Positions 1-8,128 of a DNA stretch of 8,128 bases are shown here, one piece after another. Both the position numbers and the translations under genes were made by a program. The notes beneath the pieces were generated by a model that saw nothing but the letters and a program-made list of their open reading frames with translations, was not told where the DNA came from and searched no databases. Within the stretch, counting starts at the first letter, position 1; each line of letters opens with the position of its first letter. Origin of the DNA: Octopus sinensis (Eukaryota); NCBI RefSeq assembly GCF_006345805.1, contig NW_021828539.1, forward strand, positions 1 to 8,128, read 5' to 3'.

Positions 1-92
1 AAAATATATATAACCACATCAAATATGAAGATTATAAGATACTGTATGCTTAATTGAAAACAGTTGACAAGAGAATTCTGAATGCTAAAGGG

Positions 93-389
93 ATATATAT
101 ATATATATGTGTGTGTGTGTATATATATGTATGTATATTATATATATGTGTGTGGACTTATGTGTATATATATATATATTTATAGATAGATAGATAGATG
201 TGTGTATGTTTATATAAAAGGTATGTTCAAATATGTGTGTGTATATATGTGTGTGTGTGTGTGTATGTATATATATATATATGTATGTATATTATATATA
301 TGTGTGTGGACTTATGTGTGTATATATATATATTTATAGATAGATCGATAGATAGATGTGTGTGTATATATAAAAGGTATGTTCAAATA

Positions 390-422
<33 letters not shown>

Positions 423-605
423 ATGTATATATATATATATTTATAGCTAGATAGATAGATGTGTGTATGTTTATATAAAAGGTATGTTCAAATATGTGTG
501 TGTATATATATGTGTGTGTGTGTGTATGTATATATATATATATGTATGTATGTATATTATATATATGTGGTGGACTTATGTGTGTATATATATATATATA
601 TATTT

Positions 606-639
<34 letters not shown>

Positions 640-702
640 GTGTGTATGTTTTTATAAAAGGTATGTTCAAATATGTGTGTGTGTATATATGTGTGTATAT
701 AT
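93..702. repeat. Higher-order tandem repeat built from (TA)n/(TG)n/(GATA)n blocks, about 4 units
   Basis: The anchor AAAAGGTATGTTCAAATATG recurs at 216, 372, 477 and 656 (spacing 156, 105, 179). The anchor GGACTTATG recurs at 154, 308 and 572 and is absent from the third unit. Confidence 0.92.
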
Positions 703-796
703 TTACATCTGTGTGTCAGATTGTAAGGAATGGTTTTCATATAGTGTGGAAATATATATGATGTATGTATATAAAAATATATATCTGGTGTACAGA

Positions 797-841
797 ATAT
801 ATATATGTGTGTGTGTGTGTGTGTATATAAACTCTGAAATA

Positions 842-893
<52 letters not shown>

Positions 894-925
894 GATACAG
901 AGAACTGTATGTGTGTATATATTTA
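797..925. repeat. (TA)n/(TG)n microsatellites
   Basis: Direct reading: (TA)n(TG)n at ~797-829 and (TA)n at ~848-891. Confidence 0.9.
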
Positions 926-981
926 TATCGTTCGTTATTTTGTAAAGAGATAGTTTGTTAGGTCCATCAGCTTAATTTTTT

Positions 982-1043
982 GAGAGAAAGAAGGAGGAAA
1001 GAGAGGAAGAGTAAGAGGTGCAAAGAGAGACAGAGAGAGAGGT

Positions 1044-1074
<31 letters not shown>

Positions 1075-1083
1075 GAGAGTGTG
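982..1083. repeat. Polypurine tract with (GA)n and (AGAC)n microsatellite
   Basis: GA-rich run followed by about 6 AGAC copies at 1048-1073. Confidence 0.9.
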
Positions 1084-1084
1084 T

Positions 1085-1445
1085 TTCCCTGTCTGCCCCG
1101 CGAACTACTCCTCCCACTACTTGCAGCCCGTGCAGACACAGTGGCGCCCTCTGTCCTCACATCGCTTCCACAAGTCCGCCGCTAATTCAGAGTTGTCTCC
1201 TCCTTTTGCAGTGCCACCTCTCTGTACTCCTCCTCATCGTCATCATCGTCATCGTCATCATCGGCGGCGGCGTCATCGTTGCCCTTCATACATGTCCTTG
1301 GTCGTCATCGTTGTCTGAGTTGCTGGCGGGGAGTCACAAGACCGGTGCCCTGAAGTTTAAGAAAGATCCCCTTAAGCGACTATGCCTTTCTCGGCAAGGG
1401 ACAAACAAAGGCGGGTGGGGGCGGGCAGGACGTTGGGAGGGTCGA
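1085..1445. other. Unique GC/CpG-rich island, possible exon or promoter region
   Basis: Visibly GC- and CpG-rich relative to the AT-rich flanks. It contains a (CAT/CGT)n-(CGG)3 triplet run at 1234-1278 and GC-box-like GGCGGG (1410-1415) and GGGGCGGG (1418-1425). No recognisable protein domain. Confidence 0.4.
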
Positions 1446-2633: not shown

Positions 2634-3066
2634 GGGGTGATGGTGGTGGTGGCATTTAGAGTTGCTACTTATAATAGTTGTTATTGTAGTAGCTGGTGTA
2701 GTAGGTGGTGGTGGTATTCGTGGATGTGGTCATTGTAATGGTGGTGGTGGTAGTGTTGGTGATGTTAGTGTTGGCATTGGTGATGGTGTTGGTGGTTGTA
2801 ATGTTGTTGGTGATGGTGGTAGTGGTGTTGTTGTTAGTAGTGGTGGTCATGGTGGTGTTGACACTGGTGGTGGTGGTGGTGTTAGTGGTATAGATGGCGC
2901 TATTGTTGGGTTTGTTGTTGTTGATGGTGATGGTGGTGGTGGAGGTGACAGTTGTGATGGCTGTGGTGATGATGATGGTGGTAGTGTTGGTGGTTGCGTT
3001 GTCTGTGGTGGTGGAGGCGTGGCAGTTGACTCTAGTAGTTTTGCTAGTTTCTTTGTTGTTGTTGTT
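2634..3066. repeat. Degenerate trinucleotide repeat (GGT/GTT/GAT)n
   Basis: A triplet-periodic G/T-rich tract, open in several frames (poly-G/V on plus, poly-T/N on minus) purely from composition. Confidence 0.9.
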
Positions 3067-3136
3067 CTTTGTAGAGGAAGTATGAGTGTGAGAGGTCATG
3101 TCTGGAGAGTAATCACATGTGCTTGCGTGGTAAATG

Positions 3137-3410
3137 AGTGTGTGTGTGTGTGTGTGTGGAGACAGACAACTAGATAAGGTGGAGAAATAAATTGAGAGAG
3201 AGAAAGAGAGATAGAGAGAGAGAAAGAGAGAGAGAGAGAGGGAGAGAGAGAGGGAGAGAGATAGATAGATAGATAGATAGATAGACAGATAGATAGATAG
3301 ATAGATAGATAGGTTGGTAGATAGATAGATAGGTTGGTAGATAGATAGATAGATAGACAGATAGATAGATAATTAGGTAGGTAGGTTGGTAGACAGACAG
3401 ACACACAGAC

Positions 3411-3441
<31 letters not shown>

Positions 3442-3611
3442 TAGATAGACAGACAGACAGACAGATAGATAGACAGACAGACAGACAGATAGATAGACAG
3501 ACAGACAGATAGATGAAACATACTTGAATAGACAGAAAGAGATAGATAGAAGGGGAAAGAGAAATATGGATTAGATGATAGATAGATAGATAGGTAGATA
3601 GATAGATAGAG
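3137..3611. repeat. Compound microsatellite (TG)n - (GA)n - (GATA/GACA/GGTA)n
   Basis: (TG)n at ~3137-3158, (GA)n at ~3194-3262 and tetranucleotide repeats at ~3259-3611. Confidence 0.95.
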
Positions 3612-3988
3612 TGTTCACAGTATCCACATAAGGTCATAAACCTTTCTCTACAGAGTACCAAATAACCAGATAAGCCACATAACAATATTTAACAAAAACA
3701 ATAAGGATTCCTTCGGGGGGTTTTCGTTTTGGTCCCCCCCTTCATCTTGTACCTTCCTTTTGAAATCATTGTCGCAGCCAACACCATTCATAGTGAAAGA
3801 CAAGGGACGTAACTAATGCGGGGACAGGAGAAATACAGGGAACGGCTTTGAGTTGCATACACATGTATTGTACTCCAGGAGTTTTTGTGGAGTTTTTCGG
3901 TTTGACCGGCAGTTTTTTTCCAGCGGGGTCATATGAAATTGTCACCCATAATTATGACCCTTGTATCGATCTATTGCATTTCAATCTG

Positions 3989-4395
3989 TTTTAGGGTTAG
4001 GGGTGGGGGGAAGGGTATTTTTTTTTCTTCAGAAATGTAAATAAACCCAATCTGTTTCTTAAACGAGGGACATATTCATACGGCACAGAATGTTTTTTTT
4101 TACCTCAATAGACGTCATTGATTGGTTGGAATTGCAGAAATTGAAGAAAAAACAACAACAAATATCTTACAAACTATAGAATTTTAGGGGTAGGGTTATT
4201 TAGGGTTAGGGTTAGGGGTGAGGGGAAGGGTATCTTTTTTTTCTTCACAAATGTAAATAAACCCAATCTGTTTCTTAAACGAGGACAATTTATGACACAG
4301 AATGTTTTTTTACCTCAATAGACGTCATTGATTGGTTGAAATTGCAGAAATTGAAGAAAAAACCCAACAAATATTCTTACAAACTATAGAATTTT
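3989..4395. repeat. Two-copy ~200-bp tandem duplication inside the TIR element
   Basis: AAGGGTAT...GTAAATAAACCCAATCTGTTTCTTAAACGAGG...CCTCAATAGACGTCATTGATTGGTTG...CTTACAAACTATAGAATTTT occurs twice (AAGGGTAT at 4011 and 4226). The junction has TTTT microhomology at 4182-4185. Confidence 0.93.
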
Positions 4396-5814
4396 CTCAA
4401 TAAAGCCAAGAGAAAAAGATGTTTTATAAACACATTTACAGTATACAAGTTTACAAGTGTTTAGTTACGTGGAAATTATTTTAAAAAGCTGCTGTTCAAA
4501 CCGAAAAGACCCAAATATCTTACAAACTATAGAATTTTCTCAATAAAGCCAAGAGAAAAAGATGTTTTATAAACACATTCTACCAGTATACGAAGTTTAA
4601 AAGTGTTTAGTTACGTGGAAATATTTTAAAAAACTGCCGGTCAAACCGAAAAGACCCAAATATCTTACAAACCATAGAATTTTCTCAATAAAGCCAAGAG
4701 AAAAAGATGTTTTATAAACACTTTCACAGTATACGAAGTTTAAAAGTGTTTAGTTACATGGAAATATTTTAAAAAACTGCCGGTCAACCGAAAAAAAAGA
4801 CCAAAATCTTACAAACCATAGAATTTTCTCAATAAAGCCAAGAGAAAAAGATGTTTTATAACAACACTTCTACCAGTATACGAAGTTTAAAAGTGTTTAG
4901 TTACATGGAAATTATTTTAAAAAACTGCCGGTCAAACCGAAAAGACCCAAATATCTTACAAACCATAGAATTTTCTCAATAAAGCCAAGAGAAAAAGATG
5001 TTTTATAAACACATTCTACCAGATACGAAAGTTAAAAGTGTTTAGTTACATGGAAATTATTTTAAAAAACTGCGGTCAAACCGAAAAGACCCAAATATCT
5101 TACAAACCATAGAATTTTCTCAATAAAGCCAAGAGAAAAAGAGGTTTATAAACACATTCTACCAGTATACGAAGTTTTAAAGGTTTAGTTACATGGAAAT
5201 TATTTTAAAAAATGCCGGTCAACCGAAAAGACCCAATATCTTACAAACCATAGAATTTTTCCAATAAAGCCAAGAGAAAAAGATGTTTTATAAACACATT
5301 CTACCAGTATACGAAGTTTAAAAGTGTTTAGTTACATGGAAATTATTTTAAAAAACTGCCGGTCCAAACCGAAAAGACCCAAATATCTACAAACATAGAA
5401 TTTTCTCAATAAAGCCAAGAGAAAAAGATGTTTTATAAACACATTCTACCAGTATACGAAGTTAAAAGTGTTTAAGTTACGTGGAAATTATTTTAAAAAA
5501 CTGCGGTCAAACCGAAAAGACCCAAATATCTTACAAACATAGAATTTTCTCAATAAAGCAAGAGAAAAAGATGTTTTATAAACACATTCTACCAGTATAC
5601 GAAGTTTAAAAGTGTTTAGTTACATGGAAATTATTTTAAAAAAAACTGCCGGTCAAACGAAAAAGACCCAAATATCTTACAAACTATAGAATTTTCTCAA
5701 TAAAGCCAAGAGAAAAAGATGTTTTATAAACACATTCTACCAGTATATGAAGTTTAAAATTTTTTGGTTGCCTAGAAATTATGTTAAAAACTGCCATTCA
5801 AACCAAAAAGATCC
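4368..5814. repeat. Tandem array of ten ~145-bp monomers, each ending in a copy of the right TIR
   Basis: Monomer starts (CAAATATCTT-like) are at 4368, 4512, 4657, 4802, 4948, 5092, 5234, 5380, 5523 and 5669, giving periods of 142-146. Interior monomers end with AAAAACTGCCGGTCAAACCGAAAAGACC. Confidence 0.97.
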
Positions 5815-5854
5815 GTTTTTGCTTTGTTTTACTAACGAGACCAATGCTTGTATA

Positions 5855-6837
5855 TGGTATGTAAAAAGCACCATTTGTGCATTGGACCTCATAGAGGCAA
5901 TGTGGCTGATGCTGGGGTCACATAACTGGCACCTGTGTTGGTGGCACATAAAAAGCACCACTTCAGTTTTGGGCCTTATGGAGGCAATGTGGATGATGCG
6001 GGTGTCACATAACTGGCACCTGTGTCGGTGGCACATAAAAAGCACCCTTTGAACATTGAGCCTCATGGGAGCAGTGACAAGTGACCAAGGCCTTTGGTTA
6101 TATATTCTGTGCTTGAGAAGACATGTCAAGCTGAGAGAGATCGTAGTTTTTGGCCAATGTCGGTGTTTCATAACTGGCACCTGTGTCGGTGGCACATAAA
6201 AGCACCACTTCAGTGTTGGACCTCATGGAGGTAATGTGTCTGTTGACAGTATCACCTAAATAGCACCATTTGAGCCTCATAGAGACAATGTGGCCGATGT
6301 CAGTGTCATGTAACTGGTTCCCATGTCGGTGGCACATAAAAAGCACCATTTGAGCACTGAGCCTTATGGAGGCAATATGGTTGATGCCGGTGTCACAAAA
6401 CTGGCACATAAAAGGTACCATTTGAGCATTGGGCCTCAAAAAGACAATGTGGCCAATGTAGGTGTCATGTCAGTGGCACATAAAAAGCACCATTTGAGTA
6501 TTGGACCTCATGGAGGTAATATGGTCGATGCCAGTGTCACATAACTGGCACCTGTGCCAGCGGCACAAAAAAGGGCACCATTTGAGCGTTGGGCCTCTTG
6601 GAGTTGTTGGTGATAGGAAAAGCATCCAGCTGTAAAAACCTTACCAAACCTGATCTTGTGCCATGTAAAACACACTCAGTCCGCTTTGCAGGGTGGCTGG
6701 TATTAGGAAGGGTATCCAGGTGTGAAAATCCTGCCAAAACTGACACAGCAGCCTGGGGTAGTCTTCTACCTGGTTGGCTCTTGTCAGACCGTCCACCCAT
6801 GCCAGCATGGAAGGCTGACATTAAACAATGATGATAA
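5855..6837 (+). mobile_element. Degenerate (GAT)n-tailed retroposon (SINE/LINE-3'-like) with an expanded ~87-bp internal tandem array
   Basis: The anchor AAAAAGCACC or a variant occurs at 5863, 5950, 6037, 6198, 6258, 6338, 6410, 6482 and ~6567. It is followed by TAGGAARRG(C/T)ATCCAG (twice) and CCGTCCACCCATGCCAGCATGGAAGG...TTAAACAATGATGAT. Homologous to 7507-7810. Confidence 0.75.
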
Positions 6838-7191
6838 CGCAGGGTGGATAGACATGTTACGAATGTAAAACTCTGATGACGCAGAAGGATAAGGCTCCAA
6901 AGGTCAAATTTATATGGGAAAAAAAATCTATATAAACATAAGCCACCCACGATGAAGTGCGTAAAACATTTCACATCCTGATGATCAGGATGAGAAAGTA
7001 TGGAAATGAAGAATTAGATGACACAGGGAGGATTATTGTAATGATGGGATAATGAATGGGTGGATGGGCAGGTGGGGATATGCAGATGTGGGGAAAGGTG
7101 GATGGATGTGATGACAACATAAGGTTATTGTGTCTTTAATAAAGGGTGTTTCAAAGAGCGGTTCGCTATAAGCCTATACCTATACAAATAC

Positions 7192-7510: not shown

Positions 7511-7810
7511 ACATCAAAACTCAATGGAAATTATAGTTGTGATCCCTGTGCCGGTGGCACGTAAAATGCACCATCGGAACGTGGCTGATGCCAGTTCCGC
7601 CTTGATTGGCTTCCGTGCCGGTGGCACACAAAAAGCACCGACTACACTCTTGGAGTGGTTGGCATTAGGAAAGGGCATCCAACTGTCAACTCACTGCCAG
7701 ATCAGACCGGAGCCTGGTGCAGCCTTCTGGCATCCCAGACCCCGGTTGAACCGTCCAACACATGCTAGCATGGAAAACGAACGTTAAACGATGATGAAGA
7801 TGATGATGAT
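7507..7810 (+). mobile_element. 5'-truncated (GAT)n-tailed retroposon (octopus-type SINE/LINE 3' end)
   Basis: Two GTGCCGGTGGCAC...AAA(A/T)GCACC units, then TTGGCATTAGGAAAGGGCATCCAACTGT, then CCGTCCAACACATGCTAGCATGGAAA...GTTAAACGATGATGAAGATGATGATGAT (triplet tail). Homologous to 5855-6837. Confidence 0.8.
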
Positions 7811-8128
7811 ATGTATATATAAAGATAAAATCTAAGTAAAGCCAGTGTGGAAAACAAACAAAGTATATAATTTTTTTCCTTAAATATAAAATACATTATT
7901 ATATCAAGGGCTATTACTATAAGTAACACCTCACGGTTTAAAGGGACTCTAAAGTCAAATTACTTCCCTACATATACATATATGTATTGAAGTAGTTTGA
8001 CTTAGAGTCCCATTAAAGCATGAGGCATTACTTATAGCCATAGCCCTTGATTATAATATATATATGTGCGTGCTTATCGGTATATTTCAACTGATGAAGG
8101 CAGAGCTTCTCATAAGAGAAGCCAGAAA

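What the first reader, a model, noticed from the sequence alone, without database searches (positions are those of the whole stretch)
3889..5814. A TIR transposon with one left end and ten right ends: a satellite made from its own terminus
Seen: the ~145-bp monomer is the last ~145 bp of a TIR element, so every monomer ends in a copy of the right TIR. The 25-mer AAAAAACTGCCGGTCAAACCGAAAA (for example 4919-4943) is a perfect reverse complement of 3894-3918. Interior copies end ...AAAAGACC|C, while only the last ends ...AAAAGATCC and is followed by the TSD-like 8-mer. Collapsing the repeats leaves a roughly 400-bp MITE. Known: satellite arrays inside non-autonomous elements are described (for example central arrays in Helentron/DINE-type elements of bivalves and flies), but there the repeat is normally internal and does not include the terminus. 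Inference: this may be a satellite arising from a transposon end. A transposase could pair the single left TIR with any of the ten right TIRs, giving nested elements differing by ~145 bp and leaving orphan monomers behind, or the array could act as a transposase-binding sponge.
Basis: partly seen in the sequence, partly recalled or inferred. Interest (0 to 1): 0.72.

Follow-up and report, generated by a model that had tools for sequence, protein, structure and literature searches.

The report
Transposon-like element with repeated right end
A 1.9-kb non-coding, transposon-like insertion in an animal genome carries ten tandem copies of its own last ~145 bases, each with the right-hand inverted repeat; this is real and unusual in detail, but transposon-derived tandem repeats are a known class and nothing here shows the extra ends are used.

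Summary
A 25-base stretch of the left end (3894-3918) recurs as its reverse complement once in each of ten ~144-bp monomers and nowhere else in the window. The array (4369-5814) is exactly 10.0 copies. It ends where the inverted homology ends and where a 7/8 direct repeat (GTTTTTGT / GTTTTTGC) begins.

My best reading is a non-autonomous element bounded by terminal inverted repeats (TIRs). Its terminal ~146 bp was first duplicated through a short direct repeat: GAAAAAACCC at 4356-4365 against the monomer end GAAAAGACCC. The array then grew by unequal exchange. The edge monomers m1 and m10 are diverged (about 12-13 substitutions), while the interior ones differ almost only by 1-bp indels.

The 5'-GG tips, ~29-bp TIRs and 8-bp duplication fit the Merlin type, but no transposase was available to test that. 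A Helentron-type non-autonomous element is a serious rival, because the layout is terminal repeat, then microsatellite, then tandem repeats, with T-runs at the ends.

No other genomic copy could be retrieved, so mobility, copy-number variation and use of the interior ends remain untested. TIR-derived satellites (Xstir, Tetris) and Helitron arrays with many 5' ends and one 3' end are precedents. I rate it a new variant of a known kind, of moderate interest.

The parts
3881..3888 (+). Left copy of the candidate 8-bp target-site duplication, GTTTTTGT
   Evidence: It matches 5815-5822 at 7 of 8 positions, at the TIR-defined boundaries. Null frequency is 0.0006-0.0023. It lies inside an 11-bp near-copy of the element tip (GGAGTTTTTGT, 3878-3888).
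3889..3918 (+). Left terminal inverted repeat, GGAGTTTTTCGGTTTGACCGGCAGTTTTTT. Its core CGGTTTGACCG is itself a small hairpin.
   Evidence: It is 25/25 complementary to interior monomer copies and 24/29 to the terminal copy. The CGGT/ACCG stem appears in the folds.
3919..3990 (+). Unique internal segment next to the left end
   Evidence: No homology to the monomer on either strand.
3991..4395 (+). Two ~205-bp 'A' units (3991-4185 and 4186-4395). Each starts with a TTAGGG-like microsatellite and ends with the 27-bp tail CAAATATCTTACAAACTATAGAATTTT, which is also the head of the monomer.
   Evidence: TRF gives 210 bp x 1.9 copies, 92%. Tail anchors are at 4161-4185 and 4371-4395. The A body has no homology to the monomer body.
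4356..4365 (+). Short direct repeat GAAAAAACCC just before the array. It matches the monomer end GAAAAGACCC at 9/10 and is the likely seed of the first duplication.
   Evidence: It is the only position outside the array in 8128 bp with at least 8/10 identity to the monomer-terminal 10-mer. The other A unit has GAAAAAACAA at the same place.
4369..5814 (+). Array of ten ~144-bp monomers: m1 4369-4511, m2 4512-4656, m3 4657-4802, m4 4803-4947, m5 4948-5091, m6 5092-5233, m7 5234-5379, m8 5380-5522, m9 5523-5668, m10 5669-5814. Each ends in a copy of the right TIR.
   Evidence: Raw counts against the interior consensus are 12 substitutions for m1, 13 for m10 and 2 for m2. m3-m9 differ almost only by 1-bp indels. 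The ancestral variant AAACTATAG is kept in the A units, m1, m2 and m10, while m3-m7 have AAACCATAG.
4483..5668 (+). Nine interior right-TIR copies, at the ends of m1-m9. Their 25-mer cores lie at 4483-4507, 4628-4652, 4771-4795, 4919-4943, about 5064-5087, about 5207-5229, about 5350-5375, about 5495-5518 and 5640-5664.
   Evidence: Two are exact. Most of the others differ by one indel. The m1 copy has 3 substitutions.
5786..5814 (+). Terminal right TIR (in m10), AAAAACTGCCATTCAAACCAAAAAGATCC. It is the most diverged copy.
   Evidence: 29 nt, 83% complementary to 3889-3917 (I6). Substitutions include CG>CA and CG>TG changes.
5815..5822 (+). Right copy of the candidate target-site duplication, GTTTTTGC
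   Evidence: GTTTTTG occurs only three times in the window, and two of those are at these boundaries.

Best explanation
3889-5814 is one insertion of a non-autonomous, non-coding cut-and-paste type element with ~29-bp terminal inverted repeats and an 8-bp target duplication. Collapsed, it would be a ~430-bp MITE-like element: left TIR, a 72-bp unique segment, an A unit headed by a microsatellite, a 27-bp tail, and a 117-bp B segment ending in the right TIR.

Two local tandem duplications then occurred. One doubled A plus tail. The other doubled tail plus B, and it was seeded by the short direct repeat GAAAA[A/G]ACCC, one copy of which is the outermost 10 bp of the right TIR. That is why the repeat unit runs exactly to the element's terminus.

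The array then grew to ten copies by unequal sister-chromatid exchange or replication slippage. A single interior variant was amplified recently, while the two edge monomers kept older, diverged sequence.

On this reading the nine interior right ends are by-products. They are intact enough to be recognised by a cognate transposase, but whether they ever are is unknown.

Shown: the anatomy, the direct repeat, the divergence gradient. Inferred: transposon nature, order of events, mechanism. The tips (5'-GG), TIR length and 8-bp duplication fit the Merlin superfamily, but the superfamily is not established.
For: TIRs and their restriction to one copy per monomer.

The array is an integer 10.0 copies and stops abruptly with no residual homology in the flanks.

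7/8 direct repeat exactly at the boundaries.

No ORF of note inside, and no protein homologue for any frame.

The 9/10 direct repeat at the left edge of the array is unique in the window. It is native to the A unit, since the other A copy has GAAAAAAC at the same place.

Substitution gradient of m1 12, m2 2, interior about 0, m10 13, with ancestral CTATAG kept at the edges.

A second TE-fragment tandem array lies 47 bp downstream. So local tandem duplication of repeat pieces happens in this region without any link to this element's ends.

Merlin features are taken from PMC8101967: TIRs of 24-462 bp beginning 5'-GG, 8-9-bp TSDs, and internal tandem repeats in several families.

Microhomology-driven growth of arrays inside MITEs was proposed for miDNA4, as summarised in PMC12628747.
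Against: Only one copy was seen, so mobility is unproven.

The TSD is imperfect, T-rich, and forms part of an 11-bp near-copy of the element's own tip (GGAGTTTTT at 3878 and 3889 only). It could therefore be something other than a TSD.

Beyond the T-run, the tips share only GG.

The left TIR matches the interior copies 25/25 but the terminal copy only 24/29. That is unexpected if the terminal copy was the end used for insertion and everything has aged equally since.

The layout (inverted repeat, microsatellite, tandem repeats, T-runs, hairpin-forming repeat core) also fits Helentron-type elements.
Confidence: 0.5

Rival explanations
1. It is a Helentron-type non-autonomous rolling-circle element (HINE; the DINE-1 / pearl / DTC84 kind). 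CGGTTTGACCGGCAG would be a 15-bp hairpin-forming subterminal inverted repeat preceded by a T-run. The true 3' end would lie some tens of bases beyond the last repeat copy. The 'TSD' would simply be a T-rich target. The array would be the usual central tandem repeat that happens to have absorbed the 3' subterminal repeat. Read on the other strand, it would be a rolling-circle product with many 5' ends and one 3' end.
For: HINE features come from PMC4067079: 12-15-bp, often palindromic subTIRs 2-4 nt from the 5' end and 38-60 bp from the 3' end; a 3' palindrome; T-runs at the boundaries; insertion in TT; microsatellites and tandem repeats filling up to half the element.

The order seen here (inverted repeat, unique core, microsatellite, tandem repeats) is the DINE-1 order.

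In DTC84 every core repeat ends in a conserved palindrome near the junction.

A hairpin (ACTCCA/TGGAGT) sits just outside the left repeat with z = -2.6. That would suit a 3' stem-loop if the element is read on the minus strand.

Helitron arrays with multiple 5' ends and a single 3' end are described.
Against: The inverted repeat is 25-30 bp, not 12-15 bp.

Both copies sit symmetrically at the boundaries marked by a 7/8 direct repeat.

The candidate 3' hairpin on the + strand is no better than shuffles (z = -0.39).

There is no separate right flank module, and the array ends abruptly at 5814.

The microsatellite is hexamer-like rather than the tetranucleotide type described for these elements.
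Confidence: 0.25
2. The interior right ends are functional. The cognate transposase pairs the single left end with any of the ten right ends, producing a nested family that differs in steps of ~145 bp and leaving orphan monomer arrays behind. Alternatively the array titrates transposase.
For: Interior copies keep the full TIR, and seven of nine are within one edit of a perfect match to the left TIR. That is better than the terminal copy.

Extra transposase-binding sites in tandem repeats within TIRs are documented for Galileo, and are discussed as raising transposition efficiency (PMC4079207).
Against: There is no second copy, no transposase and no orphan array to look at.

The only insertion seen used the outermost, most diverged end, if the TSD is real.

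The near-identity of the interior copies is explained equally well by recent amplification of one monomer.
Confidence: 0.12
3. It is not a transposon. On this view a local ~144-bp satellite lies next to a short inverted fragment of itself, produced by a fold-back or template-switch rearrangement that used GTTTTTG microhomology.
For: Only one locus is available.

The boundary sequences are low-complexity and self-similar.

The region is full of other tandem repeats.
Against: The inverted fragment is exactly the monomer's terminal ~30 bp and stops at the monomer junction.

The direct repeat flanks the whole unit at those same points.

The A-unit and left segments are unrelated to the satellite.

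A possible relative of the motif exists in an unrelated eukaryote-like metagenome contig.
Confidence: 0.08
4. The number of monomers is inflated or deflated by assembly, although the structure itself is real.
For: Interior monomers differ almost only by single-base deletions and insertions (4% indels). That pattern is typical of uncorrected long-read consensus in repeats.
Against: The array is only 1.45 kb, which long reads span easily. The distinct edge variants (m1, m2, m10) anchor both sides.
Confidence: 0.15

Closest known systems
Tandem-repeat-containing MITE-like elements of the DINE-1 / pearl / DTC84 type, now classed as non-autonomous Helentrons (PMC3879986, PMC4067079)
   Same: Non-coding. 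Short inverted repeats at or near the ends. A microsatellite next to a short array of ~150-160-bp tandem repeats. A conserved motif at the end of each repeat. T-rich insertion context.
   Different: In those elements the repeats are internal, between distinct L and R modules. The inverted repeats are 10-20 bp and asymmetrically placed, and the 'TSD' is AA/TT. Here the repeat unit contains the right inverted repeat and runs to the apparent terminus, there is no separate R module, and an 8-bp direct repeat flanks the element.
Tetris and other foldback-like elements (FB, Galileo) of Drosophila (PMC4079207)
   Same: Tandem repeats belong to the terminal inverted repeat region. TIR-220 probably arose by duplication of part of the terminal domain, and such repeats can carry extra transposase-binding sites and seed satellites. 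TSDs are 8-10 bp.
   Different: Those arrays lie inside both long TIR arms, behind a unique terminal domain. Here only the right arm is repeated, and each unit reproduces the terminus itself.
Xstir satellite derived from the Xmix MITE, and the miDNA4 MITE/satellite of Xenopus (as summarised in PMC9659126 and PMC12628747)
   Same: A MITE, a composite of MITE plus array, and a pure array can coexist. Xstir is listed as derived from the TIR region. For miDNA4, short direct repeats (microhomology) beside the monomer are proposed to drive array growth.
   Different: The original Xstir paper could not be read here, so I do not know whether each unit carries a complete terminus. The miDNA4 repeats are internal.
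Helitron tandem arrays with multiple 5' ends and a single 3' end (Xiong et al. 2016, as summarised in PMC12628747)
   Same: One kind of end is repeated many times and the other occurs once. The unit is a truncated element that includes a terminus.
   Different: Those arrays are rolling-circle products without TIR/TSD, found in plant centromeres. Here the element has symmetric inverted ends and a candidate TSD.
Merlin superfamily elements with internal tandem repeats (PMC8101967)
   Same: TIRs of at least 24 bp beginning 5'-GG. An 8-9-bp TSD. Imperfect TIRs are common. Tandem repeats of ~160 bp x 3-4 occur near the 3' end in some families.
   Different: Membership rests on the DDE_Tnp_IS1595 transposase, which is absent here. 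Those repeats are not reported to include the TIR.

Membership tests
Non-autonomous cut-and-paste (TIR) element / MITE-like | Terminal inverted repeats at both ends | tested here: met
   3889-3917 against 5786-5814 is 29 nt and 83% complementary. The match to interior copies is 25/25.
Non-autonomous cut-and-paste (TIR) element / MITE-like | Target-site duplication of fixed length directly flanking the TIRs | tested here: inconclusive
   GTTTTTGT against GTTTTTGC is 7/8, with a null frequency of 0.0006-0.0023. It is T-rich and forms part of a near-copy of the element tip. No empty site is available.
Non-autonomous cut-and-paste (TIR) element / MITE-like | No coding capacity | tested here: met
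   The longest ORFs lying inside the element are 43 aa or shorter. The six-frame query found no homologue.
Non-autonomous cut-and-paste (TIR) element / MITE-like | Many dispersed copies with different flanks, and small size (below about 800 bp) | not testable with these tools
   The source genome is not searchable. The metagenome, viral and prokaryote scans gave only one doubtful relative. The size is 1926 bp as found and about 430 bp when collapsed.
Merlin superfamily | TIRs of at least 24 bp that begin 5'-GG (PMC8101967) | tested here: met
   Left tip GGAG...; reverse complement of the right tip GGATC...; interior tips GGGTC....
Merlin superfamily | 8- or 9-bp TSD | tested here: inconclusive
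   8 bp at 7/8 identity, with the same caveats as above.
Merlin superfamily | Mobilised by a DDE_Tnp_IS1595 transposase carrying the same TIRs | not testable with these tools
   There is no transposase in the window and no access to the source genome.
hAT superfamily | 8-bp TSD together with short TIRs that begin with the hAT-type tip (YARNG; from my own knowledge, not checked in a paper here) | tested here: not met
   The TSD length fits, but the tips are GGAG / GGATC.
Helentron non-autonomous elements (HINE / DINE-1 / pearl) | 12-15-bp subterminal inverted repeats, 2-4 nt from the 5' end and 38-60 bp from the 3' end (PMC4067079) | tested here: inconclusive
   A 15-bp core, CGGTTTGACCGGCAG, preceded by TTTTT fits the 5' rule. 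The 3' distance depends on an end that cannot be located. The inverted match is actually 25-30 bp and symmetric.
Helentron non-autonomous elements (HINE / DINE-1 / pearl) | Short palindrome / stem-loop near the 3' end | tested here: inconclusive
   Downstream of the last repeat copy the fold is no better than shuffles (z = -0.39). A better hairpin (z = -2.6) lies outside the left end, which would fit only a minus-strand reading.
Helentron non-autonomous elements (HINE / DINE-1 / pearl) | Insertion between T and T with no target duplication | tested here: inconclusive
   T-runs are present at both boundaries, but so is a 7/8 8-bp direct repeat. No empty site is available.
Helentron non-autonomous elements (HINE / DINE-1 / pearl) | Central tandem repeats plus microsatellite lying between distinct left and right modules | tested here: not met
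   The microsatellite and repeats are present, but there is no separate right module. The array runs to the boundary and the flank has no related sequence.
Foldback-like elements (FB, Galileo, Tetris) | Long inverted arms, both built of tandem repeats | tested here: not met
   The motif occurs once on the left and ten times on the right. There is no inverted copy of the monomer body.
Classical satellite DNA | Long homogeneous arrays at many or large loci | not testable with these tools
   Only a 1.45-kb, ten-copy array is seen here. Abundance elsewhere is unknown.

The most novel reading that the evidence does not exclude
The element is a natural multi-ended transposon. Its transposase can pair the single left end with any of the ten complete right ends. 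One locus would then spawn a ladder of nested mobile elements and shed end-bearing monomer arrays, giving a direct route from a transposon terminus to a dispersed satellite. The observation that the interior ends keep a perfect match to the left end while the outermost one has decayed would then reflect selection on the ends that are actually used.
Probability: 0.1. Interest if true: 0.7.

Novelty: new variant of a known kind. Interest (0 to 1): 0.35.

Why it matters
Transposon-derived tandem repeats are a recognised source of satellite DNA, but the first duplication step is rarely caught. At this locus the seed (a 10-bp direct repeat, one copy of which is the transposon tip), the old edge copies and the young interior expansion are all still readable. 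If the family turns out to be multi-copy, it would allow a clean test of whether extra complete ends change how a cut-and-paste element moves, and whether they help spread satellites. If this is a single decayed copy, it is an ordinary example of local array growth inside a repeat.

Tried and rejected
1. Other copies by DNA. A 20-mer of the TIR was scanned in metagenome contigs, prokaryote genomes and viral contigs, and a monomer 23-mer in viral contigs. L001 and L003 are bacterial coding DNA with no flanking similarity. About one such hit is expected by chance for a 20-mer in about 6e11 bases. L002 is a possible relative only, matching 24 nt exactly and 32 of 34, with a second decayed direct copy 78 bp away.

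2. Other copies by protein. A synthetic query joining all stop-free six-frame segments of the element found nothing. The same approach on the flanking SINE-like repeats, meant to identify the organism, also found nothing.

3. Literature string searches for the TIR, monomer and SINE-like sequences gave no relevant paper.

4. Rfam and tRNA scans found nothing in the element.

5. A decayed 11th monomer or a longer inverted match is rejected, because the flanks score no better than shuffles.

6. Common ancestry of the A unit and the monomer body is rejected.

7. PIF/Harbinger (Tourist-like tips, recalled from memory) and Tc1/mariner are rejected, because no TWA or TA duplication exists at any boundary within ±4 bp.

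8. A higher-order repeat (TRF period 436) is not supported, because the interior differences are single-base indels rather than ordered variants.
Full report
CONTEXT. The window is non-coding, AT-rich eukaryotic DNA packed with simple repeats. No ORF looks like a gene, and there is no tRNA or curated RNA family above threshold. The repeats downstream of the finding look to me like cephalopod tRNA-derived SINEs. That rests on memory only and could not be verified.

The left end, 3889-3918, reads GGAGTTTTTCGGTTTGACCGGCAGTTTTTT. The reverse complement of 3894-3918 is found exactly at 4628-4652 and 4919-4943. With up to five edits it is found ten times on the + strand, once per monomer, and on the other strand only at the left end itself. 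With up to three mismatches there are six sites, where 200 shuffles gave none.

Tandem Repeats Finder reports 143 bp x 10.0 copies at 4368-5811. The alignment gives monomers m1 4369-4511 through m10 5669-5814. Interior monomers end ...CCGAAAAGACC and are followed by the C of the next unit. Only m10 ends ...CCAAAAAGATCC. The real terminal pair, 3889-3917 / 5786-5814, is 29 nt and 83% complementary.

Directly outside these points lie GTTTTTGT (3881-3888) and GTTTTTGC (5815-5822), which match at 7 of 8 positions. Pairs that good make up 0.23% of random 8-mer pairs in the window and 0.06% of pairs drawn from the two flanks. Allowing for slack in the boundaries, I put this at roughly p = 0.01-0.05.

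Neither flank, nor the 72 bp inside the left end, has any residual similarity to the monomer on either strand. So the array is an integer number of units whose right edge coincides with three things: the end of the inverted homology, the array end, and the start of the direct repeat.

ANATOMY. From left to right the element consists of:
- the left TIR (3889-3918);
- a unique 72 bp;
- two ~205-bp A units (3991-4185 and 4186-4395), each headed by a TTAGGG-like microsatellite and each ending in the 27-bp tail CAAATATCTTACAAACTATAGAATTTT;
- (tail + 117-bp B) x 10, where B ends in the right TIR.

The A and B bodies are unrelated. With the repeats collapsed the element is about 430 bp.

HOW THE ARRAY AROSE. 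The 10 bp just before the array, GAAAAAACCC (4356-4365), matches the last 10 bp of the monomer, GAAAAGACCC, at 9 of 10 positions. It is the only place outside the array in the whole window with even 8/10 identity. The other A unit has GAAAAAAC at the same position, so this sequence is native to the A unit and is not a spill-over of the array.

A segment flanked by a short direct repeat is the classical substrate for a first tandem duplication, whether by slippage, unequal exchange or microhomology-primed repair. Here one copy of the direct repeat happens to be the outermost part of the right TIR. That explains why the unit runs to the terminus without invoking the transposase. A transposase-made break at the right end, repaired by microhomology-primed copying from the sister chromatid, would give the same junction and cannot be excluded.

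Later growth shows the usual pattern of unequal exchange. Against the interior consensus, m1 has 12 raw substitutions (a few of them alignment shifts at the junction), m10 has 13 and m2 has 2. In m3-m9 almost all differences are 1-bp indels or the paired mismatches they cause in the alignment. The variant AAACTATAG, shared with both A units, survives in m1, m2 and m10, while m3-m7 carry AAACCATAG. So one interior variant was amplified recently and the edges are old. Several m10 changes are CG to TG or CA.

A second array, made of SINE-head-like units, lies 47 bp downstream. This shows that tandem duplication of repeat fragments happens in this region irrespective of this element's ends.

WHAT KIND OF ELEMENT. 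Symmetric ~29-bp inverted ends, an 8-bp flanking repeat and no coding capacity point to a non-autonomous cut-and-paste element. Tips beginning 5'-GG, TIRs of at least 24 bp and 8-9-bp TSDs are the structural hallmarks given for Merlin, and several Merlin families carry internal tandem repeats (PMC8101967). That is a fit, not a proof, because the defining transposase is absent.

The serious rival is a Helentron-type non-autonomous element. These elements have:
- 12-15-bp, often palindromic subterminal repeats 2-4 nt from the 5' end and 38-60 bp from the 3' end;
- a 3' stem-loop;
- T-runs at the boundaries;
- insertion in TT;
- microsatellites plus tandem repeats (PMC4067079; DTC84, PMC3879986).

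The core here, CGGTTTGACCGGCAG, is 15 bp, forms a small hairpin and follows TTTTT. The module order is the DINE-1 order. Against this reading: the inverted match is 25-30 bp and symmetric, the candidate 3' hairpin on the + strand is no better than shuffles (z = -0.39), no separate right module exists, and the 8-bp repeat would have to be coincidence. Read on the minus strand, a better hairpin (z = -2.6) would follow the single repeat copy, and the element would have ten 5' ends and one 3' end. That arrangement is described for Helitron arrays. I put the TIR reading at about 0.5 and the Helentron reading at about 0.25.

UNEXPLAINED DETAILS. GGAGTTTTT occurs only twice in the window, back to back at 3878 and 3889. 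The candidate TSD therefore lies in a near-copy of the element's own tip, and the reconstructed empty site resembles the left TIR start. This could mean a self-like target choice, a small local duplication, or a mis-set boundary.

The left TIR matches the interior copies 25/25, but matches the terminal copy only 24/29 and the m1 copy with three substitutions. With only 25 bp this is suggestive at best. It is what one would expect if the diverged edge monomers were already present in the master copy, or if the left end and the interior ends are the ones kept intact.

WHAT COULD NOT BE DONE. No other copy was retrievable. The TIR 20-mer gave two bacterial chance hits and one eukaryote-like metagenome contig (L002), which has a 24-nt exact match and a second decayed direct copy 78 bp away. 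Viral scans and protein-space searches were empty. Mobility, copy-number variation, use of interior ends, orphan arrays and the autonomous partner are therefore all untested. The indel-only noise among interior monomers looks like long-read consensus error, so the exact copy number needs read support.

COMPARISON AND VERDICT. Satellites derived from TIR regions are on record: Xstir from Xmix, and Tetris TIR-220 (PMC9659126 Table 1; PMC4079207). So are arrays in which one kind of element end is repeated (Helitrons), arrays inside MITE-like elements (DTC84, pearl, miDNA4), and repeats that add transposase-binding sites (Galileo).

What differs here is the one-sidedness, and the fact that each unit reproduces the complete apparent terminus. 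The seed of the first duplication is also still visible. That makes it a new variant of a known kind. It is a tidy case study rather than a new mechanism, unless a genome-wide census shows that the interior ends are used.

Noticed in passing
window 5862-6552: A second tandem array lies 47 bp downstream of the element. It has 72-87-bp units (AAAAGCACC...GGTGGCACATAAAA), at least six copies, 60-92% alike. These look like repeated tRNA-like SINE heads.
   Followed up: partly
window ~6560-6840 and ~7540-7800: Two SINE-like bodies share motifs (GGTGGCAC.TAAAA.GCACC, TTAGGAA.GG.ATCCA, CATGC.AGCATGGAA, TAAAC.ATGATGA). From memory they resemble octopus/cephalopod SINEs. The string search and the protein search were both negative, so the source organism is not established.
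   Followed up: partly
window 7903-8051: 50-nt inverted arms, 86% complementary, with a 49-nt spacer. miRNA-precursor models hit it on both strands, below their gathering scores. It is probably a small foldback MITE.
   Followed up: partly
window 3872-3899: There is a perfect palindrome, ACTCCAGGAGT, and an 11-bp stutter, GGAGTTTTTGT|GGAGTTTTTCG, straddling the left boundary. GGAGTTTTT occurs nowhere else in the window. The hairpin across the boundary has z = -2.6.
   Followed up: partly
window 3991-4395: A ~205-bp unit is duplicated (x1.9, 92%). Each copy starts with a TTAGGG-like microsatellite and ends with the same 27 bp that begin the 144-bp monomer, so both duplications have a breakpoint at this tail. 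The tail holds the palindrome CTATAG in its ancestral form.
   Followed up: yes
window 4657-5668: Interior monomers differ almost only by single-base deletions or insertions. This is typical of uncorrected long-read consensus, so small variants and the copy number should be checked in reads.
   Followed up: partly
L002 1117-1220 (metagenome contig Ga0256844_10054775): This eukaryote-like contig carries TTTTAATGAAAACTGCCGGTCAAACCGAAAAAAG, which is 24 nt identical to the TIR. A decayed direct copy lies 78 bp downstream. It may be a relative of the motif in another organism.
   Followed up: partly
window 1-1100 and 2736-3610: Very dense simple repeats are present: AT, TG, TATG, ATAG, AGAC, GAGA, AGAT and TGG-rich 24-30-mers. 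A 154-bp unit is repeated at 120-444.
   Followed up: no
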